A stretch of DNA of 64,000 bases from Octopus sinensis (Eukaryota), in the NCBI RefSeq assembly GCF_006345805.1, contig NC_043005.1, forward strand, positions 27,280,001 through 27,344,000, read 5' to 3'. The translations under genes and the position numbers were made by a program. Positions within the stretch are counted from its first letter, which is position 1; each line of letters begins with the position of its first letter. The notes below the pieces were generated by a model. The model made no database searches. It saw only the letters and a list, made by a program, of their open reading frames with translations, and was not told where the DNA came from. Positions 323 through 64,000 of the stretch are shown here, in pieces.

Positions 323-357
<35 letters not shown>

Positions 358-790: not shown

Positions 791-809
791 CATAACGTCA
801 ACAAGCACA

Positions 810-9785: not shown

Positions 9786-9796
9786 CACATAAATTT

Positions 9797-10025
9797 TACT
9801 CTTTTACTTGTTTCAGTCATTTGACTGCGGACATGCTGGAGCACCACCTTTTGTCGAGCAATCGACCCCAGGACTTATTCTTTGGAAGTCTAGAACTTAT
9901 TCTATCGGTTGCTTTTGCCGAACCAGTAAGTTACGGGGGACGTAAACACACCAGCATCTGTTGTCAGGCAATGCGGGGGGGATGGGGGGGGGACAAACAC
10001 AGACGCACAAACATACACACACACG

Positions 10026-15837: not shown

Positions 15838-16065
15838 TACTCTTTTACTCTTTACTCTTTTACTTGTTTCAGTCATATGACTGCGACCATGCTGGAGCAC
15901 CGCCTTTAATCGAGCAACTCGACCCCGGGACTTATTCTTTTGTAAGCCCAGTACTTATTCTATCGGTCTCTTTTGCGAACCGCTAGGTAACGGGGACTAT
16001 ACACACCAGCAATCGGTTGTCAAGCAATGCTAGGGGGGGACAACACAGACACACAAACACACACA

Positions 16066-17586: not shown

Positions 17587-17686
17587 NNNNNNNNNNNNNN
17601 NNNNNNNNNNNNNNNNNNNNNNNNNNNNNNNNNNNNNNNNNNNNNNNNNNNNNNNNNNNNNNNNNNNNNNNNNNNNNNNNNNNNNN
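17587..17686. other. Assembly gap (100 N)
   Basis: Directly visible. Confidence 1.
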
Positions 17687-36170: not shown

Positions 36171-36221
36171 GTTAAGGAAGGGTATTCATTGGGAAAGGGT
36201 AGGGGAAATGTGATTCTCTCA

Positions 36222-36628
36222 CTCTCTTTACTCTTTTACTTGTTTCAGTCATTTGACTGCGGCCATGCTGGAGCACCGCCTTAAGTCGAGCAAATCGACC
36301 CCAGGACTTATTCTTTGTAAGCCTAGTACTTATTCTATCGGTCACTTTTGCCAAACCGCTAAGTTACAGGGACATGAACACACCAGCATCGGTTGTCAAG
36401 CGATGTTGGGAGGACAAACACAAATACAGACACACAAACACACACATATATATATATATATACACGACAGGCTTCTTTCAGTTTCCTTCTACCAAATCCA
36501 CTCACAAGGCTTTGGTCGGCCCGAGGCTATAGTAGAAGACACTTGCCCAAAGTGCCAAGCAGTGGGACTGAACACGGAACCATGTGGTTGGTAAGCAAGC
36601 TACTTACCACACAGCCACTCCTGTGCCT
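36222..36628 (-). mobile_element. SINE family A, full length
   Basis: All modules present. Confidence 0.9.
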
Positions 36629-40400: not shown

Positions 40401-40805
40401 GCAGAGTTCCAAAACATAACCTAAAGATATCTAAAGGGAATAATTCAGTTCTCTGATCTTTTGTAGTTACGGCGTCCTCAGAAAGGCATTGTCGGCGCAC
40501 ATCTACAAGGACTTCGGAATGACTAAACGATATGGCTATTGGTTTAAAAAAAGTAGTTGATATTTTGCACTTTAGTACCTGTTTTTCATTCTGAAGAGAG
40601 CCATGAGAAATTTTCCAGTGTCGTTATTTATTACTCAATCAGCGAAATATTTTCACACGAAAACTCTATTGTCTTAGTGGTTCCTGTATCTTCGTAGCTG
40701 AGACTTTTTGTTGAGCAGAGGATATTAAGTACACACACACACACATTATGTGATTATAATCCTCTATCCCTTTATTCTTTCATTCGCTGCGGTCATGCGA
40801 ATATA

Positions 40806-40843
<38 letters not shown>

Positions 40844-41085
40844 CACATATATTCATACACACATACACACATGTGCATATATGTTTTTATCTCTCTCAAT
40901 ATGTGTGTGTATGCTCGCGCGTGATATTCTTATGTTTAATTATAACTAAAACAATTTTACGGCAATCTGAGGGGTTTATATATTTAATTAATTAATCTAA
41001 AACAACGAAGAAAGACGCAACATACATGTATGTATGTATGTATGTATGTATGTATGTATGTACACGTAAATGCGCAAAGACACTC

Positions 41086-41197
<112 letters not shown>

Positions 41198-41310
41198 CGA
41201 TTATTAAAAGCGAATGTTTATCTCGTGACTCACGCCACTTTGATCTTAACAATATGTATTGAGCTTTCCTCACTCACAAGTTCGACACAATTCAACGTTA
41301 ATATATACAT

Positions 41311-41349
<39 letters not shown>

Positions 41350-42249
41350 CATATATATATACACATACATTCATACATACACAAATATATATATGTATAT
41401 GCATACATATACATATACTAAACATATACACATACATATATATATATATGTGTATGCATGTATGTGCTTAATATGTGATATGTGCGCGTGTGTCAATGTT
41501 TTGCGCCCTCCCCTCTTCAGCGAAACATAAGGAATAAACAATAATAAAAAAGAACAAACATTATAATAAGTTATAATACAACAAAATAATAATTGATAAA
41601 AAATGTTACGTAAATACTTTTGGTTTATATTAGTTACATTACAATTAAATAGAAAACTAGATTGTCTCGAATCTACAAACGTCTGTGTAAACAATAAATA
41701 TGTTTAAGTTATGAGACGTAAATTAAGATTAATTTTTAAAAAAATAAGATAGCTATTAAATATGGCAATGAAGAATTTTGAAACGAGGAGATATATGCAG
41801 CGGTAGAAACAATGCAACGAGTTTGTTTACAGAAATATCGATTCTGGAATAAACACAAAAAGAGATCTGTCTGAGTTTGAAACAGCGGTAACAGTGTCAA
41901 TATTTACGAATTACAGACTCCGTCTACATTGCTACTACGAGTAAAAGGAAGAGGTCAGTGAATTTAAGGTGTTGATTTACAATAAATATTATTTAAACAA
42001 TACACTAATACACTCTCACACACACATACATACACACGAGCGAGCGTGCACTTTCACATACACACACAAACACACACATTGTAACTTCCCCGAAGAACTG
42101 TGCAGCCACTGTCAAAACTTTCAGACTGCTTGACGAATGTGTATGTATGTATGTATGTATGTATGTATGCATGTTTGTTTGTATGTATGAATGCATGTAT
42201 GTATGTATGTATGCGTGTATATGTATATATATATAATACATATGTATGC

Positions 42250-42295
<46 letters not shown>

Positions 42296-42361
42296 GTATA
42301 TATGTGTGTATATACATACATACATACATACATACATACATACATACATACATACATGCAT

Positions 42362-42548
42362 ATTACAAGTTCAGGTTTATACCTGTAATTACTGGACCCC
42401 TAGGATATGTAACACACTGCCTTAATACCAATCTTGAGAAATTAGGCTTCTCAAAACCAGAAAGGAGAAAGCTAATTCGAAGACTATAGATCGAAGCCAT
42501 CACTGGAACTGTAAAAATCTGTAAAACTGTCCAGAAGTTTATCGTTTA
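42362..42548 (+). mobile_element. C-terminus of an RLE-type (R4/Dong-like) LINE
   Basis: YKFRFIPVITGPLGYV...LEKLGF...IEAITGTVKICKTVQKF. Confidence 0.6.
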
Positions 42549-43108
42549 AATATACATGAGCATGTCTAGATATGCAACTATATGCATGAGAATATATACA
42601 TACAGCAAAACATACAAATCTGCACATATACATACATACATACATACATACATACATACATACATACATACATACATACATACATACATACATACATACA
42701 TACATACATTGGTCAGTCTCAGAGAGTTTTACCTGAGAGTTTATTTATATAATCAAATTCAAGAGAGGTGAGAGGTGAAAAATATTTATTGCGTATGTTT
42801 ACATTTGTTTCATAATCTGTACCCAGTTACACCATTGACATTAAAATGGCCCTACACACATATCGATGTACACTTATAGTTGTGTGGTAAACATAACGAG
42901 CAGGATTTCTCTTGAGAACATTTTATGGAGATACAACATTTAATTCTGTCGAATGACGCTGCGTCGACTCAATTTCTACGATTGACATGATTAGAAGGAA
43001 AGAGAGAATCTACCTTTTAGTTTTCAGAAATGACAATTATGAGAACATTAACATGACTATATAAAATGAAAATAAATAGAATAGAATAAGTGGCTGACTA
43101 ATTACTTA

Positions 43109-43159
<51 letters not shown>

Positions 43160-44361
43160 CATATATATATGCATATATACACACATACATGTACATGCCT
43201 ACATATATATGTATATATACATGCAAAGTGACGTCTTGTACCCATATATGCATGTGTATATACATGTATATATGCATATATATATATATATATATACATG
43301 TACATGTATGTGTGTATATATGCATATATATCATTTATATTATTATATGATCGAACGCCACGCATCCATTTCCAAGCATATATACATACATACATACATA
43401 CACACACACACAAATATATACATACATACACACACACATACATATATACACACACACACATACATATATACATATATATTTATACACACACACATATGTA
43501 TGTGTTTGGAATAAAATGTTATATATGTATATGTATGGCTACATGTGTATGCATACGTATGTGTATGTAAGTGTGTGGGAGTGTTTGTCTTTCTGTGTTT
43601 CACTGGTGATGCTTATGTATGTGGTATTCACATTTAGGGTCATCACTAATGATATTTGTAGGCCGAGGGACGTAACCAGATGAACCACTAAAATAACGCA
43701 CTCAGATCTAAGACCAAGACCAGCAAATTTAAGAGGAGAGGAGTCTGCCGAAACCATCGGCCTCAGTACTTGACTGGAACTTTATTTTATCGACCCCCTG
43801 AAGGAGGAAAGGTAATTTGACCTCCTCGTTGAAAAAATTAAAAATCTAAAATTAAATTGGGAAAAATACAAACTGAAATTCTGAATATAAGATATTTGAA
43901 AATCGAAACCTAAATGCAAACGTATGGAGGTGAAGGAGTGCTTCATGCCTTCTAATTTAATTTCAGTCATTCAGTGCAGTTTGAAAGACAGAGAAGAGAC
44001 AAAATTTGGGCTTTTATAATAAGAGTTCTAATAAATAAGTAAATCGCTTTTCAGAAAGCAGTCAATAAAAATATAAATATTGTATTGCACGAATGTGATG
44101 ATTTATTTTCATATTGAAATTTTATGTCAAAAAAATATGTGAATTTTAATGAACGCTGAGGACAGAGTTTATTCCTTGTCTCATTGACGATTAATAAACT
44201 TTCCATATATTTCTTCATTTATATCTTTCTATATTTTAATCACAACTGTCTTTAATTCAGTGATTCTTCCGCCTTAATTTAATCTTCAAATCTGCACCAG
44301 AGTTTGTAATAGAGTCCAAATCAGATAATTGGGTGAAATTATAATAATAATAATAATAATG

Positions 44362-44699: not shown

Positions 44700-45071
<372 letters not shown>

Positions 45072-45521: not shown

Positions 45522-45665
45522 TTAAAAATACCTTGGGAATGAAAACCCAGGTTCGAAATTTCTCCAAGACACCTGATGAAGGCTGGAGGGTACAACAGTC
45601 GAAACGTTGTGTTAACAAACAAGATAAGGACAAATATCCGTCAATTGTAAATAATGTACATAATT
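45191..45665 (+). mobile_element. Family E: tRNA-headed, hammerhead-bearing SINE, full length
   Basis: A-box-like 45202-45212, B-box-like 45247-45256, (AAT)(AAG)(AAC)n linker, hammerhead, TGTAAATAA tail. Confidence 0.85.
45568..45613 (+). ncRNA. Minimal type I hammerhead ribozyme motif
   Basis: GACAC CUGAUGA A GGCUG GAGGGUACAA CAGUC GAAACGUU GUGUU; predicted cleavage after 45608. Confidence 0.8.
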
Positions 45666-47289: not shown

Positions 47290-47747
47290 GTACCAGCAAT
47301 TTTGAGAGGGAAAGACAAGTCGATTACATCGACCCCCCACTGCTACGAACTTTATATTATCGACCCTGAAAGGATGAAAAGCAAAATTGACCACGATGAG
47401 AATTAAATTCTGATCGTAATGAAGCGGATCAAATTCTGAAAAGCATTCTGTTCGACGCGCTAACGATCACGCCAGGTCACCACCTTAACACAACAACAAC
47501 AACAATAATAATAATGGTTTCAGATTTTGGCACAAGGCCTGAAATTTGGTGGGAGGTGACTAATCGATAACATCGATCCAAGTGTTTCACTGGTATTTAA
47601 TTTCTCGACTCAGGATGAAAGGCAAAGTCGACCTCAGCGGAATTTGAACTCAGAACGAACGAAAATGACGGACGAAATGTCGCTAAGAATTTCGCCCGGC
47701 GTGCTAACGATTCTGCCAGTTCACCACCTTAATTATAATAATAATAA

Positions 47748-47819
<72 letters not shown>

Positions 47820-48033
47820 TAATCCTTTCTACTAAAGGCCCAAGGCCTGAAATTTCTATGGAGGGAACTAATCGATTACATTGGCCACAGCGTTTCACTG
47901 GCACTTAATTAATCGACCCCTGAAAGGATGAAATGCACAGTCGACCTCGGCGGAATTTAAACTCAGAACGTAGCGATGAGCGAAATACTGCTAAGCATTT
48001 TGTTCAGCGTGCTAACGATTCTGCCAGTTCGCC
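47290..48033 (-). mobile_element. Three head-to-tail SINE family B copies separated by (AAC/AAT)n
   Basis: ~47290-47470, 47525-47730 and 47825-48033. Confidence 0.85.
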
Positions 48034-48057
48034 AATAATATACAAATCCACATCAAT

Positions 48058-48470
48058 AGGCGCAGGAGTGGCTGTGTGGTAAGTAGCTTGCTAACCAACC
48101 ACATGGTTCCGGGTTCAGTCCCACTGCGTGGCATCTTGGGCAAGTGTCTTCTGCTATAGCCCCGGGCCGACCAATGCCTTGTGATTGGATTTGGTAGACG
48201 GAAACTGAAAGAAGCCTGTCGTATATATGTATATATATATGTATGTGTGTGTGTGTGTGTTTGTGTTTGTCCCCCTAGCATTGCTTGACCACCGATGCTG
48301 GTGTGTTTACGCCCCCGTCACTTAGCGGTTCGGCAAAAGAGACCGATAGAATAAGTACTGGGCTTACAAAGAATAAGTCCCGGGGTCGATTTGCTCGACT
48401 AAAGGTGGTGCTCCAGCATGGCCGCAGTCAAATGACTGAAACAAGTAAAAGAGTAAAAGAGTAAAGAGTA
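48058..48470 (+). mobile_element. SINE family A, young full-length copy
   Basis: Almost identical to 59439-59840 and 60788-61197. Confidence 0.9.
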
Positions 48471-48662
48471 ATCTGGTTGTCATAACATATTTATTACTGG
48501 AGATTAATGTGTTAACGTACAAGGTTAATTGAAGAAAAGATTGTAACATTACATGAATATATTCTGTTTGCAATCACATATCTCCAAGTAAGTGAGGCGA
48601 ACGTGCGAGCGAGTGTGTATATGCGGCGGCACGATCCAATACATGTCGAAGACTCAACAGGC

Positions 48663-48773
48663 ACTGAATGGCGCGAATTTAGCAATTCCTTCCTTTATAT
48701 AAGGGATGAACCGGAAGTCCCCGACTTCCGCGTAAACCGGAAGGTTTCAGAATGTTCGAGAACATTCTAGAAG
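48663..48773 (-). promoter_or_regulatory. Heat-shock-type Pol II promoter (HSE, ETS sites, TATA, Inr)
   Basis: GAA-TTT-GAA-TTC-GAA-TTC-GAA at 5-nt spacing (48740-48772); CCGGAAGT at 48711; minus-strand TATAAA at 48699-48694; ATTCAGT Inr at 48669-48663. Confidence 0.7.
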
Positions 48774-48988
48774 CTCGAGAGAAATTACTCTCGTTAAATC
48801 CCTTTTCAGTTTTGCTTCCTAACGTGTCCGCCAGGGTTCAGTACACGTGTATGCATCGATAATTCAACCACATATTTACAAACACCGGGAATTCTCTCTT
48901 AACTCAAACACTCTTGTCACTTTGGTGACCGGCTCGAACTCTCAAGAACTTGAATTAAGCTCAAAGAAAAATCATACATATACATACA

Positions 48989-49022
<34 letters not shown>

Positions 49023-49280
49023 CACACATACATACATACACACATACACATACATACAAACACACACACATACATACATACATGCATACATACATACATA
49101 CATACATGCACACATACATGCATGCATACACACACACGCACACGTGTATGTATACGTTTGGTAATATATGAATGTATCTAGAGATGAATACACTTGCAAC
49201 AATTAATGGATAATATATATGCGTGTGTGCGTGTGTGAGTGCGTGCGTATGTGTGTGCCCGTGTGTGTGTATGGTGATAC

Positions 49281-49440
<160 letters not shown>

Positions 49441-49441
49441 C

Positions 49442-49805
<364 letters not shown>

Positions 49806-50011
49806 AAAAACTAACAGAAATTATTTTAATCGAACCAGAATCTTGGTTTTGTACAGAGCTTCTTACACAATACGAGTAATCGGATTGTCCGCCTTGTCTT
49901 TCTTGTCTTTCTTCTTCTTTAGGTATTTGGCACGGACCAGAGTTTTGCGATAGAGTTTTACGGAAATTACCAAAGGACTTATATAACAAAATTATATTAA
50001 TTATATTATAT

Positions 50012-50159
50012 AGGCGTAGGAGTGGCTGTGTGGTAAGTAGCTTGCTTACGAACCACATGGTTCCGGGTTCAGTCGTACTGCGTGGCATCTTGGGCAGCCT
50101 CGGGCCGACCAAAGTCTTGTGAGTGGATTTGGTAGACGGAAACTGAAAGAAGCCCGTCG

Positions 50160-50207
<48 letters not shown>

Positions 50208-50442
50208 TGTGTGTATATGTTTGTGTGTCTGTGTTTGTCTCCTAACATCGCTTGACAACCGATGCTGGTGTGTTTACATCCCCGTAACCTGGCGGTTCGG
50301 CAAAAGAGTCCGATAGAATAAGTACTAGGCTCACAAAGAATAAGTCCTGGGGTCGATTTGCTCGACTAAAGGCAGTGCTCCAGCATGGCCACAGTCAAAC
50401 GACTGAAACAAGTAAAAGAGTAAAAGAGTAAAAAGAGAGTAA
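50012..50442 (+). mobile_element. SINE family A, full length
   Basis: All modules present. Confidence 0.9.
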
Positions 50443-51649
50443 ACCTTGACACATCTTCGCTCAAGTTTCAGCTGTTAATACACTGCTCCACTCAAGTTTT
50501 TACTCCATCAAAGATTTTTATTTTATTTATCTATGTATTAATTCTTTCTGTTTCTATATATGTTTTTATTTATTTTTTTGATAAGTACTGTACCTAGTTT
50601 AAATATTTTATTTCTAAGATAAAAATCACGGTTTCTCTAAACGCCCAACGTCTCTCCTGCCACCAACGCTCGTCGTTAGCATTCACCGCGTACTTGTCAG
50701 AGATTAAAACGTCCCTAAGGATACGTTACCGCTCAGGTTAAAAACCGGTGGGTATTATATAAGTTTGTAAGCCAGTCCGTTTGGGTACAATCTACCCAAC
50801 TAAACCACCACCCTACCTGTGACTGATTGTTATGTGTGGAGATGGAAAGCGAGAGGGAGAAGGAAAAAGGCAGACGGATAGAAAACGAAAGCTTATAATC
50901 TTTGTTTTATGTCATGTTATTTGAGAATGAGATAACAAGGTATCGTGTTTACCAATTCCATTAATCTATAACCGACTACACCCCCTTTCCGAAGCCTCCA
51001 ACCACCTCCACCTTCATCTTCCTCCGCGCAACATCACCACCACCACCACCATCCATTTATCCACCAACCAAAACGTCAAAAATTTCATTTAAAATTAATT
51101 AATTAACGTCACTAATTAACACCACGTGTCATTCAAAAATATTTTTAGAAAAAGGACGGCGACCAGTAAACAAGTATAATCGGGTGTGTTGTGTATATCG
51201 AATTAATAATTTACTAATTAGGATCCTTGACTAATTATAATTTGACTTTTAGAATTAAGCTTTAATTGGTTTTTCATTAAGTGTTGCCATCGCAATCTTT
51301 CGAACTGTGTCCAGTGAGACTGTGTGACTTAGTGATGTTCATGCCCTTCCAAAGAAATAGCAACGTTTTGAACTTGATTGGAGGGATAAGACAGAAATTT
51401 TCATTACACTTCATTTCGAACTGGAATCGAAACTGTGTTGCCAATTTTATTTGTCTCCTATTTTCAAATTATACTGATACTTTATTTGATCGACCCCGGA
51501 GGAACGAAAGGGGAAATAAACTTCAGCGTGGTTTGAACTCAGAATGTAAAGAGCCGGAACATATGGCACAAGGCGTTCAATTTTAGGTTAGCACTTTTTT
51601 TTTTGATTCTTCTCAAATATTCCTACCTTCTACATTTTCCGACGGAGAA

Positions 51650-51830
51650 TTCTATGTGCCTCCAATACATACACCAGAGTACTTGCAACAGTTACCTCCA
51701 TTCATTGCCTTGATTAGTGTCTCATATGGGAGTTTAATCTCTTCGCACTCTGATATATTCCCCTGGACCAATTCTGACCCAGATTTCCAGTTTGCATCCA
51801 TTTCAAGACATCTATATACAGCCTGATACC
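51650..51830 (-). mobile_element. R4/Dong-clade RT remnant
   Basis: EEIKLPYETLIKAMNGGNCCKYSGV resembles the EGIxLP...IK...YKYLGV region. Confidence 0.45.
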
Positions 51831-52311
51831 CACATAAATTCTACCAGGAATAAAACAAATCTGAGTCAAATCCAAACGAATAATAATAATATACAAGAGT
51901 AAACAGAATTGGAAAAGAAACAATGGTGTATTATAAAAACTCGGAGTATGAATTTCTCAGTCAGTTTAACAAGTTTATGATCCAAGTAGTTATCATTCGG
52001 TTTTAAGAATAGTGACAAAGAATTTAAGAGTAAAACTTTGAAAATTTGATCTTCATCTGGGAATGGGTCAAGTGCAAAAAGCCTGTTTACTTGGATCAGC
52101 AAGAATTATCCATGATATAAAGTAAGGCTTGGATAGAATGTAGAGACATATGGGCAGCATAGAGGGATCTTAATAAGACAGGAGATAAGAATACTTCTCA
52201 TTCCGGTCCACAGGTTCTTGTTTGGCTGGAAGGGTAATTAAACCGGTTTACAAACACCAATACCATGTAACGGCAGAGTAGTAGTAGTAGTAGTGTAGTA
52301 GTAGTAGTAGT

Positions 52312-52343
<32 letters not shown>

Positions 52344-52484
52344 TAGTTGCAGTTGTTGTTGTTGCAATATAACTTCTAACAAAGGCCACAGAATTGTGGA
52401 GGGAGGGAGGGATGGACACCACAGCCTAGCGTTTGTACTTATTCTAATAAATGTTACTTCAATAATAATAATAATAATAATAAT

Positions 52485-53072
52485 GCAGTACCAGGATGCC
52501 CTGATGCAGTACCTAAATGCCCTGATGCAGTACCAGGCAGAGGCTCTCATGGCTTGTGATCTTAACTGATTGGAAGTGTTATCATGTACATTGTTTTGTC
52601 TTGGTATAAAAGATGGGCTACAGCAAATATTCTGCTCAATACCACAGATTTGCTTGTCAGTTGTTTGACCTTAACCAGTTGAGCATGTCCCTTAGTGGCT
52701 GACGATATGTGCATCTCTGATCACGAGCAGAAGTAGTGGGGGAGCATCATAGCCATGTGTTGAGAAGGATTCTTTGGGGTTTGAATAATTCACCTCTGGA
52801 AACATGGGTGTTTCGTTCAACGTCCTTAAACAACCCTTATTCAGGGACCTTTTGAGCGGGATGGGTTACTCGATCTGAAGAAAATTCTAACTGGGCTCCA
52901 CCTGCAAGGTCATGTGCTGTTTATCTTGATATGAGATCATCATATCGCGCACATATGGTTGTGATGCATGTGCCTGGTGTACCCTTATCAGACGGGTAGT
53001 CATGATGGGTATACTGGGCTTCGTATATTTTACCCCAGTGTCACTTTGATGGCATGCTCTGCTCGCTCACTC
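52485..53072. mobile_element. Non-coding ~590-bp element (family D) inside an (AAT)n tract
   Basis: (AAT)n on both sides; three ATGCAGTACC-containing repeats at the left end; partial second copy at 61739-61849. Confidence 0.75.
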
Positions 53073-53137
<65 letters not shown>

Positions 53138-53573
53138 TAATAATAATGAGAGTAACATCAACATATACATCAGCAATAACACCAACAACACAACATTCAC
53201 TTGTCTGAAAAGAATTAAGCTCTTGTGTCTTAGTACAATTGTGGTACTAAAGACCGGCGTTTATATTCATGTATATATTTTATTATTGTCAAATAAATTG
53301 GATTTCTTTGAAATCAAAGTCTTCCTTAATAGGTTTCAGACATAAGGTTAGGGTAAAGCAGGGAGAATAACTATATTTTTTCTGTGATTATATGAAGGAA
53401 ATGTTGCGAGTGAGAGGTGTGAGTCAACAAAATTAACCACCAGAGCACGGTTATACTGGCAATAAAACTGCCAGAGATGACTATCAAATGTAAAAAAATG
53501 TACATACACAAATAATGACGTTTGTTGGGCACATAATACACTACACATTTCTGGTGTATATAATAAAAATAAA

Positions 53574-53641
<68 letters not shown>

Positions 53642-53658
53642 TAATAGTAATAATAATA

Positions 53659-53718
<60 letters not shown>

Positions 53719-53754
53719 CAACAACAACAACAACAACAACACAACAACAACAAC

Positions 53755-53902
53755 ATCGAAAAATACCTTAGGAATAAGAACCCAGGCTCGAAATTTCCCC
53801 AAGACCCCTGATGAAGGCTTGGGGGGTATATCAGCCGAAACGTTGTGTCAGCAATAAACAAGATGAGGACAAATATCCGTCGAATGTAAATAATGTAAAT
53901 AA
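53755..53902 (+). mobile_element. Family E 3' part with hammerhead at 53803-53849
   Basis: GACCC CUGAUGA A GGCU-loop-AGCC GAAACGUU GUGUC; follows a long (AAT)n(AAC)n tract; no head visible. Confidence 0.75.
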
Positions 53903-54293
53903 ATTACATTGAATTAATCATGATTTTAGTTCTACAAGTTCACATGTTTTTCTTGCAAAAATAACATGGCGCCGAAATTTTGTATATTTTTCATCATTGC
54001 TGAGTCATAGAAGAAGCAGGAGAAATGGTTATAAATTGTAACAGCAGCAGCAGCTTTTAGTAATAGTTCTTGATAAAGTCAAAAGACAGATTTTCTTAAA
54101 TCAAAAATTATTAATTGTATTTTTTGAAAAAACCTTTCTAGTGGAAGGAAGTTTCTGTTTTAAGCTCTTTTCGCTTTTTCAGCTTTTCAAACACACGTGT
54201 TATAAAATAATCCGTAGTGTCTGTGTCAATCTGCTTACTCTAAATATATATAAACACAGACAGACAGAGAGACAGACAGACACACAGACAGAC

Positions 54294-54362
<69 letters not shown>

Positions 54363-54559
54363 TAGATAGATAGATAGATAGATATGGATATATACATATA
54401 TATATATATATGTATACATATATATGTGTTTGTATGTAAATATATAAGTAAGAATGAATGAGTGAGTGAGTGAGTCAGTCAGTCAGTAAACGTAGCTCTT
54501 TTTATATCAACTTTTTACCCTAATTCCCAAGATATAGGCTTATAATCCTTGTTTGTCAA

Positions 54560-54900
54560 CGCATATAAAGATTTTAAAAATTACCTCTGTTTTCTCTTCC
54601 TTATTGGTATTGGATGGCTTATGACTGATATTTTCTTGTCAAACATAAATTCCAATATAGATTTAACAATGTCGGTACACTTACTTCTATTCTTCTGTTG
54701 CCAAACGTGCTTTGAGAGCGGTGTGGTGTTTTCTTTGACTGGTTTGTGTGCATATTTTGGTGTAGTCGGTTGAGATAAAGCTCTGTAAGGCCATTTTTCT
54801 AGGTTTGGTTCTGTGATAAAGTTATTTATGTATTGCCTGACTTGAAGGACTCTGTGGATATGCGACGATATTATATTTTTTGTCCGTAATGGATTAACTG
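54560..54900 (-). mobile_element. Possible PLE GIY-YIG remnant
   Basis: ENTTPLSKHVWQQKN resembles N.T.LSK..W.LK; otherwise very decayed. Confidence 0.3.
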
Positions 54901-55134
54901 TTTTATTAAATATTTTCCCTGTCGAATAAATTATGGTGTTTGTTGTTGTATTTGTGAGTGTTTGTTGATTACGGAAAGGAACTGTCTCATCGGAGAAGCT
55001 ACAATGCCTTGATTCTACGGGAGATTAAACCAACTACACTTCTCTCTTTGGTGGTGGTGGCAGTGGTGGTGGTGGTGGTGTTTGCGTGTGTGTGTGTGTG
55101 GTGTGTGTGTGTGTGTGGTGTGTGTGTGTGTGTT

Positions 55135-55170
<36 letters not shown>

Positions 55171-55269
55171 GTGCGTGGATTAACGACGGGAGTGGTATCA
55201 ATACCAAAAGGTAATCTTTGTATGCAACTTATCGTGGATATCTTTTCTAAAGCACTGAATACTTCGTTA

Positions 55270-55437
55270 TTAGGCTTGAGAGATCCTCCGAAATAGGCCT
55301 CCCGCTGATGACTTTAAGTAGAATGAAGTTGCGTGATATGGGAATTCCGGCGCCCATGACAGGCGATTTTTGTCTGCAATGATCTATGGGTGTTTTCATG
55401 CAACAAGCGCCTATACGAGAGGACCTCTCAAGGCTAA
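55270..55437. mobile_element. Small MITE-like element
   Basis: TAGGCTTGAGAGATCCTC versus the reverse complement of GAGGACCTCTCAAGGCTA: 16/18 match. Confidence 0.45.
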
Positions 55438-55449
55438 CAACGCAGTATT

Positions 55450-57660
<2,211 letters not shown>

Positions 57661-58040
57661 TATCTATGTCGGTGTGTGTGTGTCTTTATGCCCGTTCTTA
57701 TGCACCAACTGCTGTTGGTGTATTTACGTCCTCGTAAATTAGCCGTTCGGCAAAAGAAAAGGAACAATAAAATAAGTACAAGACGTACTGGGGTCATGAA
57801 CGAATTGACCCCAGTTCTTGAAGGCGGTACCCCAACATATTCTCAGCCTAATGACTAAAACCCGTTAGCGTGGTGCCCCAGCATGGCCGCTCTCTAATAC
57901 TGAAACAAGTAAAATCTAAAATGTGTGTGTGATGGACTCTCCCGTCGTTAGACGACATATGAAGGTTCGACAATTTATTATTGAACAACCACACAGATGA
58001 TTTGTTTAGACATAAGACACAGATATGACATAAGACACAG

Positions 58041-59135
58041 AGTGGTGTTCCGCAAGGCTCTGTTTTGGGACCACTACTGTTCATAATGGCCCTCTCAGAC
58101 ATGCCCTCAGCCACGCAGAGAGCCACGATCACAAGTTATGCAGATGATACAAAAGTTTCACAAGCAATACAGAACCCTGAAGACACTATGCACCTGCAAT
58201 GTGAGCTGGACAAAACATACAAGTGGGCTGAAAAGAATAGCATGCAGTTCAATGCTGAAAAGTTTCAAGCTTTATGCTATCAGCATGCAAAACTAAATGC
58301 AATACCCAATAAATACACGGGGCCTGGAGGGATTGCAATCCCAGAGGCACAATCAGTGCGAGACCTGGGTATTCACATGAGTGATGATGCAACTTTTCAT
58401 GTGCATGTTGCTAAATTGGCAATGAAATGTAGGCGGCTGACCGGATAGATTCTTAGAACCTTTAGAACAAGAGACCAGGAAACCATAATGGTCCTCTGGA
58501 GGACACTTATCCTAAGCCACTTTGACTATTGCTCTCAGCTATGGTCACCATCCAGTGTCAAGTTAATCACAGAACTTGAGGCGATCCAACGAAGCTACAC
58601 GAAGAAGATAGCCTCTGTGCAGCATATAAGCTACTGGGAAAGACTCAAGAGATTAAGACTCTATTCCTTAGAGCGTAGGCGAGAAAGATATGCCATAATA
58701 TACATCTGGAAGATCCTAGAAGGACTTGTCCCAAACTTTGGCATCGAGAGTTACACAAATGCTAGAACTGGGCGCCACTGCATAGTGCCAAGGACTCCAA
58801 ATTTGCCATCAAGATGTAGGACAAGATACTGTGATAGCCTGGGCTTCAGAGGCCCACAGCTCTTCAATATCCTCCCGAAGAACCTGAGAGACCTGCATGG
58901 AGTGGATGCAGATGTCTTTAAAATAAAACTGGATCTCTTCCTGTCAGATGTCCCAGATGAACCAACTTCACGGCAGGAGGTGCAGATGAGAGCAGCTGCA
59001 TCGAAATCTCTCATGCACCAAATGGCAATTGCTAAAAAGCATTCGTGAAGTAAAATCATGTAGCAACACCAAATGGTGGTGCCCCAGCATGGCCAAAGCT
59101 CGTGAGCTGAAACTAGATAAAATAAAATAAAATAA
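58041..59135 (+). mobile_element. 5'-truncated CR1/L2-group LINE (RT 3' half, 3' UTR, (ATAAA)n tail)
   Basis: SGVPQGSVLGPLLF, YADDTK, RDLG, DYCSQLWSP and LYSLERRRERY in one frame, broken by a single TAG at 58446-58448. Confidence 0.92.
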
Positions 59136-59174
59136 CATAAATAAAGATGATTTGTGTAGACATAAGCTCACTCC

Positions 59175-59362
59175 TTCCATCAGATCGACATTACCTGTAC
59201 AGGCGCAACAGGTGCCACATGTCAGATGCCGAAATGATCGCAGAGCAACATGAAATGAAGTGCTTTCCTCAAGAACACAACGCAACGCCCGGTATGGGAA
59301 TCGAACCCGCAATCTCGCAATCGTGCGTGCAACAACCTAACCACTAAGCCACACGCCTTCAC
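59175..59362 (-). mobile_element. tRNA-headed SINE of a further family
   Basis: Minus: GTGAAGGCGTGTGGCTTAGTGGTTAGG...GCGGGTTCGATTCCC, then GTGTTCTTGAGGAAAGCACTT. Confidence 0.65.
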
Positions 59363-59438
59363 TTATATACATACATAAATATAGATAGATAGATGGATAG
59401 ATGGATAGATGTATATAATATTTATGTGTATATATTTA

Positions 59439-59840
59439 TACTCTTTTACTCTTTTACTTGTTTCAGTCATTTGACTACGGCCATACTGGAGCACCGCCTT
59501 TAGTCGAGCAAATCGACCCCGGGACTTATTCTTTGTAAGCCCAGTACTTATTCTATCGGTCTCTTTTGCCGAACCGCTAAGTGACGGGGACGTAAACACA
59601 CCAGCATCGGTTGTCAAGCAATGCTAGGGGGACAAACACAGACACACAAACACACACACACATATATATATATACATATATACGACAGGCTTCTTTCAGT
59701 TTCCGTCTACCAAATCCACTCACAAGGCATTGGTCGGCCCGGGGCTATAGCAGAAGACACTTGCCCAAGATGCCACGCAGTGGGACTGGACGCGGACCAT
59801 GTGGTGGTTAGCAAGCTACTTACCACACAGCCACTCCTGC
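59439..59840 (-). mobile_element. SINE family A, young copy
   Basis: Near-identical to the 48058 and 60788 copies. Confidence 0.9.
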
Positions 59841-59863
59841 ATATGTATATATATATATGTGTG

Positions 59864-59912
<49 letters not shown>

Positions 59913-59986
59913 TATGTATATAATATATGTATGTATGTATGTATATGTATATATATATATATGCATATATATAATATATATATATG

Positions 59987-60050
<64 letters not shown>

Positions 60051-60079
60051 TAATATATATATCATGTGTGTGTGTTACA

Positions 60080-60289
60080 CAGGGTTGTTTAAAAATAGAT
60101 TACAGGTATTCAACTAACTCTTTCGCATTCATATATTAACAGTTTAGATCTTAATTATAAAAAATATGAAACCATTATTCTATGCTAACTTGATTAATTG
60201 TAAGAAAGAAATTTAAATGTAATAAGATGTTTTAAAAGAAATTTAAAGTGCCTACGTGATAACTGTAAACTTACTTTTGGGCCACCCTG
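60080..60289. mobile_element. Possible degenerate mariner-type MITE
   Basis: CAGGGT... and ...ACCCTG|TA ends, divergent further in. Confidence 0.3.
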
Positions 60290-60787
60290 TATATTTCAAG
60301 TCACTCTAAGAAGCAGTGCACGTTACTAGAATTTTCGACTGGAATTAAATGTAACAAGCCACTTGAAATCGTTGTAAGAGCATCCGCATAAGTAGTGTTA
60401 AGACATGATAGTTTGTTCTGGCATTGAGTGGTATTAGATGTAATAATAATGTCAAACCAAAGAGTGAAGTTTTGAAATAATTTACTGCTTTAACTGAGGA
60501 AGGTATTACGCAATGCATGCATTTCCTATCATATATTATGCAAACCTGGAACGTACGTATTAAATTATCTCAAAATATCAGTGTTTTATTTGGCCTTATT
60601 ACAACTACGTGTGTATGTGCATGTGTATGTGTGTGAGTGCATGCTTTTGTCCTTCTCCGTCGCTTGACAACCTAGGTTGGACTTTTACGTCCCTGTAACT
60701 TGGTTGCTCGGCCAAAGAGACATAACAAGTACTGATGACTGGATCAAATAAAAGAGGAAAAAAAGGGTAAAAGATAATATACATCAA

Positions 60788-60956
60788 CGCAGGAGTGGCT
60801 GTGTGGTAAGTAGCTTGCTAACCAACCACATGGTTCCGGGTTCAGTCCCACTGCGTGGCATCTTAGGCAAGTGTCTTCTGCTATAGCCCCGGGCCGACCA
60901 ATGCCTTGTGAGTGGATTTGGTAGACGGAAACTGAAAGAAGCCTGTCGTATATATG

Positions 60957-60991
<35 letters not shown>

Positions 60992-61197
60992 TTGTGTGTC
61001 CCCCTAGCATTGCTTGACAACCGATGCTGGTGTGTTTACGTCCCCGTTACTTAGCGGTTCGGCAAAAGAGACCGATAGAATAAGTACTGGGCTTACAAAG
61101 AATAAGTCTCGGGATCGATTTGCTCGACTAAAGGCGGTGCTCCAGCATGGCCACAGTCAAATGACTGAAACAAGTAAAAGAGTAAAAAAAGAGTAAA
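60788..61197 (+). mobile_element. SINE family A, young copy with probable 7-bp TSD
   Basis: ATCAACG at 60783-60789 and 61197-61203. Confidence 0.9.
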
Positions 61198-61209
61198 TCA
61201 ACGAAAAGG

Positions 61210-61540
61210 AACACACATCCATGTGAATAGTTCGCCAGTTAGAAAATATCTGGAGAAATACCACATCTGGAATATCAAGGCCGGCCATGAAAGCGACAAG
61301 ATGGAATATCGGAAATTTGACAATTAACGAATACATTGTTATTTAAGAATTAAAGCCCACCAACGATGGTGGACAACAAATGTACGACGCTCGTTAGTAA
61401 CTTAAAACACTCCTAATCTGGTCTTGTCGTAAAGCCTTCCTATCGCATCCCTCACATATCTGCACAGGTCAAAACTACATTTACATACACTCCTATGTTA
61501 TTGATAAGGGCTTTTTATAGCCGAAATATTAAAATATTAG
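61210..61540 (+). mobile_element. Decayed PLE 3' end with U3-A8 hammerhead-like motif (61501-61530)
   Basis: LTINEYIVI*ELKPTND resembles the PLE L.I.EA..I...KP.LN motif; then UUGAUAA G GGCU-6nt-AGCC GAAAUAUU. Confidence 0.5.
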
Positions 61541-61634
61541 ATAAAAGTGTAACATGTTGTTTCATGATTTTTTTTTTTTATATTAAACCCCTTTTTATTT
61601 TCTTCTTTTGCAGTAGTTGCTTTCTAAATCTCTT

Positions 61635-61672
<38 letters not shown>

Positions 61673-61681
61673 TAATAATAA

Positions 61682-61712
<31 letters not shown>

Positions 61713-61738
61713 AGTAATAGTAATAGTAATAGTAATAG

Positions 61739-61849
61739 TGATGCATGTGCCTGGTGTACCCTTATTAGACGGGTAGTCATGATGGGTATACTGGGCTTCG
61801 TATATTTTACCCCAGTGTCACTTTGATGGCATGCACTGATCTCTCACTC
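61739..61849. mobile_element. Family D partial copy in a triplet tract
   Basis: Matches 52960-53072. Confidence 0.8.
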
Positions 61850-61925
61850 AATAATGATGATGATGATGATGATGATGATGATAATTTCTTTTATAATAAT
61901 GATAATAATACTAATAGCAATAATT

Positions 61926-61964
<39 letters not shown>

Positions 61965-61974
61965 GTTTCAATTT

Positions 61975-62150
61975 TTGGTAATTTCGGTAAGTCGATTGCA
62001 TCAACCCTAGTGCTTAACTGGTACTTATTTTATTGACCCCTTAAAAGGATAAAAAGTAGAGTCGACCTCGGCGGAATTTGAACTGAGAACATAAAGACGG
62101 ACGAAATGCCGCTAAGCTTTACCATGTCGCCCGACATGGTAACTGTTCCG
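61975..62150 (-). mobile_element. SINE family B
   Basis: Homology to the other B copies. Confidence 0.75.
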
Positions 62151-62699
62151 CCTCTGTCTCACCACCTCAAATTGTCAATTTATTTATCGACATCGAAAGG
62201 ATGGATAAAAGGTAAAGTTGACCGATGCGGACTGACACTCAATGTAAGAGAGTTAGGAAAGAGAAAGAGAAAGAGGGAGAGAGAGAGAGGGGGGATAGAG
62301 GGAGAGAGAGAGAGAGAGACCTATGAAAAAAGACAGTCGGGAAAAGAATTAATTCTCATGCTAAAATACGTATACACATAAACACACACACACACACGCA
62401 AAAGTACATGCATGCATAAATGCATATATACATGCGTACACACACATACACACGCCGAGCAGCCGGGTGTGGGTTCTTAGTTTTGTATCTAAATCAGAAT
62501 TGTGTACATATGTATGTATGTATGCATGTGTACACAGACACGTATATGCGTGTGTATAGGTACGTATATGCGTCTATATATGTATACATATACAATTAAT
62601 CATTATATATGCATTATATATATTTCGACGAATATACATGTATGTGTACGTGTATGTATGGATGTATACTTATAATCATTATATAAGCAATAAATAAAA

Positions 62700-62751
<52 letters not shown>

Positions 62752-62771
62752 GTGTGTGTGTATGTGCGCGC

Positions 62772-62802
<31 letters not shown>

Positions 62803-63289
62803 TGTGTGTGTGTGTCAAGAGGAACTCACACAAACATCCATATCTTTAGTTCTGAGTTAAGATAACAACGATTCGCGAGTGCCAATTATTCAGCTAACAA
62901 ACAGATTTAGCAGGAATGGTCTTACGGAATAACTCTAAACTAGCCAGCTGTACAATAAACAATTTCAGAACTTTTCTACCAGTTAAATATTTCCAGAAGA
63001 CGAAAATATTGTTCTTTGTGTAGTTTTGGAAACAATAATATAAGGAAGTAATAATAATAACAATGGTGGTAATAATAATAATAATTTATCTCATTGTACA
63101 TCAAGCTAACAATTCCTATTTCTTCTTTATCCGACAGTCCTTCCACTCGTTGACTATTTTACCGTTTTCCATATTGTCCTCCCCCACCTCCCCCTCTTCT
63201 TTGGCACTTTCTTTCAACTGCAGTGTCTGCTACACTATTCGTTTAAGACTTATAATAACTTTTTTTTTCTTTCTAATATAAGCACAAGG

Positions 63290-63478
63290 CCAGCAATTTT
63301 GAAGGGAGAGATAAGCCGATTACATCAACATCAAGTTCTCAACTGGTATTTAGTATATCAATCCTGAATGGATGAAAGGCAAAGTCAACCTCGGTTGCAT
63401 TTGAACACAGAACGTAAAGTCGGAAGAAATGCCGCTGAAAATTTTGTTCGGCGCAGTAGCGATTCTGCCAGTTCGCCC
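63290..63478 (-). mobile_element. SINE family B
   Basis: Homology to the other B copies. Confidence 0.75.
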
Positions 63479-63491
63479 AATAATAATAGAA

Positions 63492-64000
63492 TTTGTAGAC
63501 AAAAATGGTGAAACCGTATGGCATATTACCAGTCAATGTACGCCACTAGTCCAGGAAGAATATGATACATCATGACAATATAGCAATGATTGTCCATAGG
63601 ACACTTTCCAACAAGTATGGATTTGATAGAGCAAACAGTGGTACGTACATAAACACGAAGGCATCATCGAAAATGATAATGCAAAGATCCTACGGGATTT
63701 TATGACTCAGTGCGACCTTGAGAGAGAGAGAGAGAATAGGAAGCCAGACAAAGAGTTAATTGAGAAAGAAAGCAAACTATGCTGGATCATAGATATAGCA
63801 TGTCCAGCTGACAAGGTGTGCGATAAAGAAGAAAGAAAAGTCGATAGATGTAATAGGTTAGCTTGGGAGGTCAAACAGTTGTGGTCGCTAAAAATGGTGG
63901 TAGTAGTACAAATAATCGTCGGAGCCCTAGAAACAGTGAGTAAGAATATTGAGAAGTATATGGAACAAATAGGGGCAACAATAAAGGTGGAGCACTTGCA
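63492..64000 (+). mobile_element. R4/Dong-clade LINE: CCHC region and restriction-like endonuclease, decayed, runs off the window
   Basis: ETVWHITSQC...HDNIAMIVH, NDNAKILRDFMTQCD, RKPD...WIIDIACPAD...EVKQLW...IIVGALETV. Confidence 0.85.

What the first reader, a model, noticed from the sequence alone, without database searches (positions are those of the whole stretch)
48560..48790. Orphan heat-shock promoter with no visible HSP gene
Seen: five perfect alternating nGAAn units (48750-48772), extending to seven with one mismatch. Three ETS-type CGGAAG sites, a minus-strand TATAAA and an ATTCAGT initiator follow in canonical order and spacing (HSE about -75 to -108, TATA about -34, start ~48665), in a CpG-richer island. 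Established: this is HSF-target architecture. I recognised no chaperone exon in the 48 kb downstream; the transcript would first cross SINEs and then the sense ribozyme at 44770. Inference: either a non-coding first exon with a very long intron, a stress-induced lncRNA, or a stranded promoter.
Basis: partly seen in the sequence, partly recalled or inferred. Interest (0 to 1): 0.7.

Follow-up and report, generated by a model that had tools for sequence, protein, structure and literature searches.

The report
Orphan heat-shock-type promoter in repeat-rich DNA
A compact, very well-formed heat-shock-factor promoter sits alone in a gene-less, repeat-filled stretch of what looks like an octopus genome; it is not a chance match, but what it drives cannot be told from this window and is most likely a non-coding transcript.

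Summary
At 48740-48772 there are seven alternating GAA/TTC units, five of them perfect. They abut three ETS-type CGGAAG sites. On the minus strand a TATATAAA box (48701-48694) and an ATTCAGT initiator (A+1 at 48665) follow at canonical distances. A perfect five-unit element is expected about 3e-4 times per window, and three CGGAAG sites beside it make coincidence negligible. The 0.5-kb block is single-copy in the window, lying between a SINE and a microsatellite. Its six-frame translation matches nothing in 5.8 billion predicted proteins, while a flanking non-coding SINE frame finds 35 clusters, so it is not an abundant repeat. No chaperone exon, and no host-gene exon of any kind, was detected on either strand of the 64 kb; only mariner and reverse-transcriptase fragments appear. 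Neither direction offers a good splice donor near the start, and the minus strand has AATAAA at +171. My best reading (about 0.45) is a genuine HSF-responsive initiation region whose output here is a short or long non-coding RNA. Rivals are a solo-LTR-like transposon promoter, a stranded relic, or the first exon of a gene outside the window. This is a known kind of element and of moderate interest. Genome-wide copy number, cross-species conservation and heat-shock transcription data would decide.

The parts
48740..48772 (.). Heat-shock element array: seven alternating GAA/TTC units. Units 3-7 (48750-48772) are perfect and unit 2 is TTT. It contains the high-affinity TTCTAGAA core.
   Evidence: It is the only HSE of 3 or more perfect units in the window. 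A perfect 5-unit array is expected 2.7e-4 times per 64 kb.
48710..48744 (.). Three ETS/GABP-type sites (ACCGGAAGT +, CGCGGAAGT -, ACCGGAAGG +) with GGAA cores 13 bp apart. Sites 1 and 2 form the palindrome CGGAAGTCcccGACTTCCG. Site 3 overlaps HSE unit 1.
   Evidence: P(3 or more CGGAAG in a given 40 bp) is about 4e-8 at the window's own rate.
48694..48701 (-). TATA box TATATAAA on the minus strand (-36 to -29 relative to 48665). It also reads TATATAAG on the plus strand.
48663..48669 (-). Initiator ATTCAGT (TCA+1GT type), with the predicted start at A 48665.
   Evidence: Position is inferred from the TATA spacing; there are no transcript data.
48472..48665 (-). Putative minus-strand transcribed leader. 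It has a 31-codon ORF with no homolog, no good splice donor, and AATAAA at 48495->48490 (+171), ending at the tail of the SINE.
   Evidence: The RNA fold z-score is -0.32, so there is no structured RNA.
48806..48842 (+). Two initiator-like TCAGT motifs on the plus strand (48806-48810, 48838-48842), 143 and 175 bp from the minus-strand start. They are candidates for a divergent start site and have no TATA.
   Evidence: The plus-strand 48808-48975 folds less well than shuffles (z +1.65).
48777..48849 (.). Upstream flank (relative to the minus-strand start) with GAGAGA (48777-48782) and a palindromic E-box TACACGTGTA (CACGTG at 48844-48849).
   Evidence: These are motif matches only.
48472..48979 (.). 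The 0.5-kb block that carries all of the above. It is single-copy in the window and is bounded by SINE-A (48059-48470, +) and an (ATAC)n microsatellite (48980-49134).
   Evidence: No protein-database match in any frame, against 35 clusters for a SINE frame.

Best explanation
This is a genuine RNA polymerase II initiation region built to respond to heat-shock factor.

Proposed mechanism (inferred from established promoter grammar, not shown here):
- ETS/GABP-type factors on the three CGGAAG sites, and perhaps a CACGTG-binding factor, keep the 150-bp module open.
- On proteotoxic stress, two HSF trimers bind cooperatively to the 5-7-unit array centred about 90 bp upstream of a TATA-plus-initiator core promoter.
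- They drive transcription leftwards from about 48665. A weaker TATA-less start probably fires rightwards from about 48808-48840.

Within the window the product is non-coding. I expect either a short unspliced RNA of about 190-200 nt ending after the AATAAA at +171, or read-through RNA running antisense through the SINEs. So the locus belongs to the non-coding arm of the heat-shock response (a stress lncRNA or an enhancer-type transcript) and is not the promoter of a chaperone gene.

Shown: motif content, spacing, improbability by chance, single-copy status in the window, and the absence of coding exons. Inferred: factor binding, heat inducibility, start sites, and transcript ends.
For: - Motif quality and order.
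- Chance expectation: a perfect 5-unit HSE is expected about 2.7e-4 times per window and about 10 times per 2.5 Gb. Given one, three CGGAAG sites within 100 bp has a probability of about 8e-6.
- Four of the five perfect units carry the preferred A before GAA.
- The HSE lies 75-107 bp upstream of TATA/Inr. In Drosophila, HSF-dependent activation is concentrated where HSF binds within 200 bp upstream of the start site (PMC5002978).
- The block has no second copy in the 64 kb, while the adjacent SINE has 14.
- Its six frames match no predicted protein, whereas a non-coding SINE frame finds 35 clusters.
- No host coding exon was detected anywhere in the window.
- No usable splice donor lies near either start, and there is an early AATAAA on the minus strand.
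- Non-coding HSF targets are an established class: lincRNAs, pseudogenes and repeats in C. elegans (PMC6765114); SatIII, NEAT1 and eRNAs in mammals; hsr-omega in Drosophila (PMC9032817).
Against: - There are no expression, binding or conservation data.
- A motif alone does not ensure occupancy. In Drosophila S2 cells, 708 good HSE motifs were HSF-free against 442 HSE-containing bound peaks, and chromatin state decided which were bound (PMC2936546).
- The TATA box sits at -36/-34, a few bases further upstream than the textbook -31/-30.
- Exons in ORFs under 40 aa, in repeat-masked parts, or outside the window would have been missed by the domain and homolog screens.
- The splice-donor matrix was a rough generic one typed from general knowledge.
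- Genome-wide copy number could not be measured, so a transposon origin is not excluded.
Confidence: 0.45

Rival explanations
1. The block is a solo LTR or another remnant of a heat-responsive transposable element. It would be a U3-R-U5-like unit (enhancer motifs, TATA, start, AATAAA) left after the internal part was lost. It could still fire on heat shock but serves no host gene.
For: - Promoter and poly(A) signal lie in the same orientation within one 0.5-kb block (TATA 48701, start 48665, AATAAA 48495).
- The minus-strand ends read TG... (48974) and ...CA (about 48474).
- Dense arrays of factor sites are typical of LTR U3 regions.
- Transposons that spread HSEs are documented: Helitrons in Caenorhabditis (PMC6927752), and ONSEN as cited in PMC9032817.
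- The surroundings are saturated with repeats.
Against: - There is no second copy in 64 kb.
- No hit in any frame among 5.8 billion predicted proteins, although a non-coding SINE frame from the same window finds 35 clusters.
- No gag, pol or RT remnant adjoins it.
- TG/CA ends and an AATAAA are weak evidence in AT-rich DNA.
- Target-site duplications are unreadable because a SINE and a microsatellite abut the ends.
Confidence: 0.2
2. It is a stranded relic: the promoter of a former HSF-target gene (for example an intronless HSP70 copy) whose coding part was deleted or rearranged away. It would now be inert or only spuriously active.
For: - It has a classic inducible-gene core (TATA + Inr + proximal multi-unit HSE) with no gene behind it.
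- Both flanks have been overrun by SINE insertions and microsatellites.
- The plus-strand flank 48808-48975 is C/A-rich (56% A+C), unusually unstructured (z +1.65) and ends ...AAAAATCAT just where the (ATAC)n tract starts. This is reminiscent of an HSP leader, but it is only a resemblance.
Against: - tblastn with HSP70, HSP90, HSP60, HSP10, DnaJ, sHSP and ubiquitin probes finds no decayed remnant anywhere in the window.
- The motifs are almost undecayed: one defect in seven HSE units, all three CpG-containing ETS sites intact, and a perfect TATA. Neighbouring SINE copies differ from each other by 3-25%.
Confidence: 0.15
3. It is the true promoter and first (largely non-coding) exon of a protein-coding gene whose other exons lie outside the window. 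That would mean more than 48.6 kb to the left or more than 15 kb to the right.
For: - Cephalopod-type genomes are gene-poor, and this window has no host exon at all, so very long introns are plausible.
- The window's CpG o/e of about 0.8 suggests it is not the methylated body of a broadly expressed gene (PMC9476566). That is compatible with an inducible gene.
Against: - No good 5' splice site lies within 1.5 kb on the minus strand or within 1.2 kb on the plus strand. The first strong ones are SINE-borne.
- AATAAA at +171 comes before any donor.
- Fast heat-inducible genes are typically compact. A first intron of more than 48 kb would delay product by tens of minutes (general knowledge).
Confidence: 0.12
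4. It is an assembly artefact. The promoter belongs to a gene that was separated from it by a mis-join or by collapse at the flanking microsatellites.
For: - The window contains a 100-N scaffold gap at 17587-17686.
- The block is flanked by long microsatellites, which are typical break or collapse points.
Against: - No gap lies within 30 kb of the block.
- The sequence runs continuously from the block into the SINE and the microsatellite.
Confidence: 0.05
5. It is a chance cluster of short motifs in AT-rich DNA, with no regulatory history.
For: By composition alone, a perfect 5-unit HSE should occur about 10 times in a 2.5-Gb genome. A genome-wide scan will therefore find some by chance.
Against: The joint occurrence with three CGGAAG sites (about 8e-6 given the HSE), a TATA box and an initiator in the right order, strand and spacing brings the genome-wide expectation to well below 1e-3.
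Confidence: 0.02

Closest known systems
Canonical HSP-gene promoters (e.g. Drosophila hsp70; human HSPA1A)
   Same: Multi-unit nGAAn array within about 100 bp upstream of a TATA box and a focused initiator. GAGA-type and other accessory sites lie nearby. HSE-to-start distances are in the range where HSF activates (PMC5002978).
   Different: No chaperone gene or any other coding gene follows it. ETS-type sites fill the space between the HSE and TATA. The TATA box is a few bp further from the initiator.
HSF-driven non-coding loci: Drosophila hsr-omega, human Satellite III and NEAT1, C. elegans heat-induced lincRNAs and pseudogenes
   Same: An HSE-bearing promoter whose transcript has no meaningful ORF. 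hsr-omega and NEAT1 are single-copy genes, as this block appears to be (PMC9032817; PMC6765114).
   Different: No long-period tandem repeat tract lies downstream, only ordinary microsatellites and SINEs. There is no sequence similarity and no expression evidence.
HSF1-bound transcribed enhancers (divergent eRNA units)
   Same: A central factor-site cluster is flanked by initiator-like motifs on opposite strands about 143-175 bp apart. There is an early poly(A) signal and no 5' splice site, which would give short unstable RNAs (PMC9032817, section 2.4).
   Different: One side has a full TATA + Inr core, which is more typical of a strong focused promoter. HSF acting at a distance is reported to be weak and rare, at least in Drosophila (PMC5002978).
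Transposon-borne HSEs (Caenorhabditis Helitrons; plant ONSEN LTR)
   Same: HSEs and a promoter sit in non-genic, repeat-rich DNA. The block has an LTR-like layout with TATA, start and AATAAA.
   Different: No other copy lies in the window, there is no trace in protein-prediction databases where the neighbouring SINE is visible, and no element termini or coding remnants were recognised.

Membership tests
HSF-dependent heat-shock promoter | At least three contiguous inverted nGAAn units (HSE) | tested here: met
   Five perfect units, and seven with one mismatch, at 48740-48772.
HSF-dependent heat-shock promoter | HSE within about 200 bp upstream of a core promoter (TATA and/or initiator) on the same strand | tested here: met
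   The HSE lies at -75 to -107, TATATAAA at -36 to -29, and ATTCAGT at the start, all on the minus strand. This is sequence-level evidence only.
HSF-dependent heat-shock promoter | A chaperone or other heat-shock-response gene immediately downstream | tested here: not met
   Pfam scans of all ORFs of 40 aa or more on both strands, tblastn with seven chaperone/ubiquitin probes, and a homolog search of 86 unique minus-strand ORFs gave only transposon fragments.
HSF-dependent heat-shock promoter | Heat-induced HSF occupancy and transcription | not testable with these tools
   This needs ChIP or CUT&Tag and nascent or capped RNA data from heat-shocked tissue.
Stress lncRNA loci of the hsr-omega / Satellite III type | The transcript lacks protein-coding capacity | tested here: inconclusive
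   No coding exon was detected in the window, but the transcript's extent is unknown.
Stress lncRNA loci of the hsr-omega / Satellite III type | A long tandem-repeat tract within the transcription unit | tested here: not met
   TRF finds only 2-4-bp microsatellites and a few short arrays downstream.
Transposon-borne HSE / solo LTR | Multiple dispersed copies of the block | tested here: inconclusive
   It is single-copy within 64 kb. There are 0 database hits for its six frames against 35 clusters for a SINE frame. The genome-wide count is not obtainable with these tools.
Transposon-borne HSE / solo LTR | Element termini (TG...CA), target-site duplication, and an adjacent PBS/PPT or coding remnants | tested here: inconclusive
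   TG and CA are present near the block ends, but this is trivial. The flanks are occupied by a SINE tail and a microsatellite. No gag or pol domains lie nearby.
Divergently transcribed HSF-bound enhancer | Paired opposite-strand start sites about 110-200 bp apart around the factor sites, with an early poly(A) site and no 5' splice site | tested here: met
   TCAGT lies at 48665 (-) and at 48808 or 48840 (+). AATAAA lies at +171 (-). The best donor scores within 400 nt are 4.1-4.4. These are motif-level tests only.
Vertebrate-style CpG-island promoter | GC above 50% and CpG o/e above 0.6 over more than 200 bp, standing out from a depleted background | tested here: not met
   GC is 0.41-0.47. 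CpG o/e is 1.24-1.54, but the background is already 0.8 and other parts of the window tie the peak. The criterion is also inappropriate for a sparsely methylated genome (PMC9476566).

The most novel reading that the evidence does not exclude
This could be a single-copy, HSF-driven stress lncRNA gene of a cephalopod, a lophotrochozoan counterpart of hsr-omega, NEAT1 or SatIII. Its heat-induced read-through transcript would run antisense through SINEs and, 3.9 kb downstream, carry a sense-oriented hammerhead-motif repeat (44778-44810). Heat shock would then be coupled to the production, and perhaps the self-cleavage, of ribozyme-bearing repeat RNA.
Probability: 0.08. Interest if true: 0.65.

Novelty: new member of a known kind. 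Interest (0 to 1): 0.3.

Why it matters
If it is active, it would be a clean example from a mollusc or cephalopod of the non-coding arm of the heat-shock response. That arm has so far been documented mainly in flies, nematodes and mammals. The roughly 110-bp HSE-ETS-TATA-Inr module would also be a natural candidate for a compact heat-inducible promoter in emerging cephalopod genetic systems. If it proves to be a transposon remnant or a relic, it illustrates how strong stress-responsive promoters are scattered in repeat-rich genomes, and why an HSE alone should not be used to annotate heat-shock genes.

Tried and rejected
1. A hidden HSP gene. Pfam scans of every stop-to-stop ORF of 40 aa or more (entropy-filtered) on both strands of the whole window found only mariner transposase/HTH and reverse-transcriptase fragments, plus noise-level hits. 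tblastn with memory-typed HSP70, HSP90, HSP60, HSP10, DnaJ, alpha-crystallin and ubiquitin probes found nothing.

2. Any annotated or predicted protein exon downstream. A composite of 86 unique minus-strand ORFs gave 0 hits.

3. A multi-copy element. Self-BLAST gave no second copy. The six-frame composite of the block gave 0 hits. A control with a SINE frame gave 35 clusters.

4. A structured RNA gene under the TATA box (snRNA or Pol III type). Rfam shows nothing at this site, and the fold z-scores are -0.32 and +1.65.

5. A satellite-type lncRNA body. No long-period repeats were found.

6. Relatives in public nucleotide collections. The ETS+HSE composite pattern gave 0 hits. The 20-nt ETS palindrome gave 3 hits in GC-rich bacterial contigs with no flanking similarity, so these are chance.

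7. Extending the context beyond the window by exact-protein look-up. The protein was not on record.

8. DNA references with stop codons are not accepted by the family scanner. I worked around this with alignments of individual ORFs.

9. The bacterial-type promoter/terminator scan is irrelevant here.

10. Literature searches for octopus HSE promoters or octopus heat-stress lncRNAs returned nothing specific.

Full report
WHAT IS THERE

The plus strand of 48680-48790 holds a dense run of motifs:
- ACCGGAAGT at 48710-48718.
- ACTTCCGCG at 48724-48732, which is CGCGGAAGT on the minus strand.
- ACCGGAAGG at 48736-48744.
- From the GAA of that last site onward, GAAggTTTcaGAAtgTTCgaGAAcaTTCtaGAA at 48740-48772.

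That last stretch is seven alternating GAA/TTC units at exact 5-bp phase. Five are perfect (48750-48772). One is defective (TTT at 48745, which loses the critical G on the other strand). Four of the five perfect units have the preferred A before GAA, and the array contains the TTCTAGAA core.

To the left, on the minus strand, TATATAAA reads 48701->48694 and ATTCAGT reads 48669->48663. With A+1 at 48665, TATAAA starts at -34, the ETS sites span -45 to -79, and the HSE spans -75 to -107.

On the far side of the HSE lie GAGAGA (48777-48782), two plus-strand TCAGT motifs (48806 and 48838) and a palindromic E-box (CACGTG at 48844).

IS IT MORE THAN CHANCE?

- The HSE pattern search finds only this locus in the window: 0.07 expected with up to 2 mismatches, and 0 of 100 shuffles reach the observed count.
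- The only perfect 3-unit HSEs in 64 kb, and the only 4-unit HSEs with up to 1 mismatch, are the registers of this one array.
- From the window's base composition, a perfect 5-unit array is expected 2.7e-4 times per window but about 10 times per 2.5 Gb. On its own, then, it could be a genome-wide chance find.
- The context settles it. Three of the window's ten CGGAAG sites lie within 32 bp. The probability of three or more in a given 40 bp is about 4e-8, or about 8e-6 within 100 bp of a given point.
- A TATA box and an initiator then follow in the right order, strand and spacing.

The module is a product of selection, or was inherited from something that was selected. It is not coincidence.

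CONTEXT

The window looks like a cephalopod genome.
- It is packed with microsatellites.
- It carries 14 copies of the 3' half of a roughly 420-bp tRNA-type SINE with an internal (TG)n tract.
- A reverse-transcriptase-adjacent ORF has 135 homologs, one of them named Octopus vulgaris. This is a lead, not an identification.

The promoter sits in a 0.5-kb block (48472-48979). On the left it is bounded by one such SINE (48059-48470, plus orientation, with three copies of a second SINE beyond it down to 47298). On the right it is bounded by (ATAC)n (48980-49134).

Copy number:
- The block has no second copy in the window.
- Its six reading frames match none of 5.8 billion predicted proteins.
- As a control that non-coding repeats of this genome type do show up in such collections, one antisense frame of the neighbouring SINE finds 35 cluster representatives at up to 74-81% identity. 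That control used a different search tool and library, so the comparison is indicative only.
- The block is therefore not an abundant repeat. A low-copy element cannot be excluded.

CpG enrichment is real but modest: o/e is 1.24 against 0.80 for the window, and GC is 0.41-0.47. It is also of little diagnostic value if this is an octopus. [quoted passage not shown]

IS THERE A GENE?

I translated all stop-to-stop ORFs of 40 aa or more (low-complexity ones removed) and scanned them against Pfam.
- Minus strand 1-48800: only mariner Transposase_1 (2e-25) and HTH_48.
- Both strands from 48600 to 64000: only RVT_1.
- Plus strand 1-48600: nothing above noise.

A composite of the 86 unique, non-repeat minus-strand ORFs between 2900 and 48470 found no homolog at all.

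The window contains no recognisable host exon on either strand.

WHAT WOULD BE TRANSCRIBED?

Minus strand, downstream of 48665:
- There is a 31-codon ORF with no homolog.
- No structured RNA is predicted (z -0.32) and there is no Rfam match.
- No convincing 5' splice site appears. The best score within 200 nt is 4.1 and within 1.5 kb is 5.8, and the latter lies inside a SINE. Sites scoring 6 or more occur about once per 450 nt in the window by chance.
- There is an AATAAA at +171 (48495->48490), just before the SINE tail.

Plus strand, from 48808:
- No good donor appears until SINE-borne ones beyond +1200, and no AATAAA until +882.
- This flank is C/A-rich (56% A+C) and folds worse than 192 of 200 shuffles.

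Only microsatellites and SINEs lie further downstream. There is no hsr-omega- or SatIII-like long-period repeat. Sequence therefore gives no support to a spliced first exon. It fits short unspliced RNAs or read-through non-coding RNA.

MECHANISM

Established knowledge says that HSF trimers bind three or more inverted nGAAn units, cooperatively on longer arrays. In Drosophila, HSF-dependent activation is concentrated where HSF binds within 200 bp upstream of the start, while action at a distance is weak and rare (PMC5002978). Here a 5-7-unit array lies 75-107 bp from a TATA + initiator core, which is the working geometry.

The three top-consensus ETS sites, two of them as a perfect palindrome, are the kind of constitutive sites that could keep the module accessible. 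That matters because in vivo HSF occupies only HSEs in pre-opened chromatin: 442 HSE-containing bound peaks against 708 free motifs in S2 cells (PMC2936546).

I therefore propose a heat-inducible initiation region firing mainly leftwards from about 48665, possibly divergently, with non-coding output. These steps are inferred. Nothing here shows binding or transcription.

ALTERNATIVES

- Solo LTR or other transposon remnant (confidence 0.20). TATA, start and AATAAA in one 0.5-kb block with TG/CA near the ends is an LTR-like layout, and transposons that spread HSEs are known (PMC6927752). Against it: single copy in the window, database silence, and no coding remnants nearby.
- Stranded relic of a lost HSF-target gene (0.15). 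This fits the missing gene, but not the near-perfect preservation of the motifs amid SINE copies that differ by 3-25%. No pseudogene trace was found either.
- First exon of a gene outside the window (0.12). This is possible in a gene-poor genome, but it lacks a donor and has an early poly(A) signal.
- Mis-assembly (0.05). There is a 100-N gap at 17587-17686, and microsatellites flank the block.
- Pure chance (0.02).

COMPARISON WITH KNOWN SYSTEMS AND NOVELTY

By architecture the site works like a canonical HSP promoter, but it fails the membership feature of having a heat-shock gene behind it. It resembles HSF-driven non-coding loci (C. elegans heat-induced lincRNAs and pseudogenes, PMC6765114; SatIII, NEAT1, eRNAs and hsr-omega, PMC9032817). 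It lacks their repeat tracts and any expression evidence.

I file it as a new member of a known kind, an orphan or non-coding HSF target, of moderate interest. What would raise the interest is conservation as a single-copy element, together with heat-induced transcription that reads into the sense-oriented hammerhead-motif repeat 3.9 kb downstream.

DEAD ENDS

Public nucleotide scans gave nothing homologous. An exact-protein look-up to extend the contig failed. Literature searches for octopus HSE promoters or heat-stress lncRNAs found nothing specific.

Noticed in passing
window 3892-3924 (-), 44778-44810 (-), 45573-45605 (+), 53808-53841 (+): A hammerhead-ribozyme core motif, CTGATGA-(GGCTG...CAGCC)-CGAAAC, occurs four times (0.03 expected). 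Each lies inside a copy (about 86% identical) of a repeat of about 185 nt next to an (AAT)n tract. The 44745-44830 minus-strand RNA folds into the three-helix hammerhead junction as its minimum-energy structure. No Rfam hammerhead family matches the window at the gathering score, and the more permissive E<=1 scan, which covered only the 44778 and 45573 copies, found none either. This looks like a SINE- or retrozyme-borne minimal hammerhead.
   Followed up: partly
window 48059-48470 (+), 50013-50445 (+), and 12 further partial copies (e.g. 9794-9982, 15838-16047, 36221-36422, 59439-59640, 60993-61197): A SINE of about 420 bp with a tRNA-like head, an internal (TG)n microsatellite, a conserved 3' half and an (AAAAGAGTA)n tail. 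There are 14 copies of the 3' half in 64 kb, at 71-98% identity. Its antisense frame appears as 'proteins' in public prediction sets (35 clusters).
   Followed up: partly
window 47298-48057: Three head-to-tail copies of a second SINE family end in (AAT)n tails and are stacked directly against the first SINE. This suggests repeated insertion into A-rich tails next to the promoter block.
   Followed up: no
window 12272-12967 (-) and 16754-17167 (-): Mariner/Tc1-type transposase fragments: Pfam Transposase_1 at 2e-25 and HTH_48 at 6.5e-12 (coordinates assigned by ORF length and sequence).
   Followed up: no
window 58029-59045 (+); also 1734-2201 (-) and 285-930 (-): Non-LTR retrotransposon reverse-transcriptase fragments. 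RVT_1 scores 1.2e-12. The downstream ORF 58488-59045 has 135 homologs, the best at 67-74% identity on short ENA contigs, and one named Octopus vulgaris at 59%. This is the only lead to the organism.
   Followed up: partly
window 17587-17686: A run of exactly 100 N, which is a scaffold gap, so the window comes from a gapped assembly.
   Followed up: no
window 40800-43540 and 49030-49260: (ATAC)n and (AT)n microsatellites score up to 71 bits against microRNA families such as mir-297, mir-3149 and mir-466 in a permissive Rfam scan. All are below gathering scores and are low-complexity artefacts.
   Followed up: yes
window 48585-48593 (+): A near-consensus 5' splice site, CAA|GTAAGT, lies on the plus strand inside the promoter block, 75 bp left of the minus-strand start. 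It follows a 12-codon ATG-initiated frame (48553-48588). Hand scoring gives about 8.7. Sites scoring 8 or more occur about once per 1.6 kb, so it is probably chance.
   Followed up: partly
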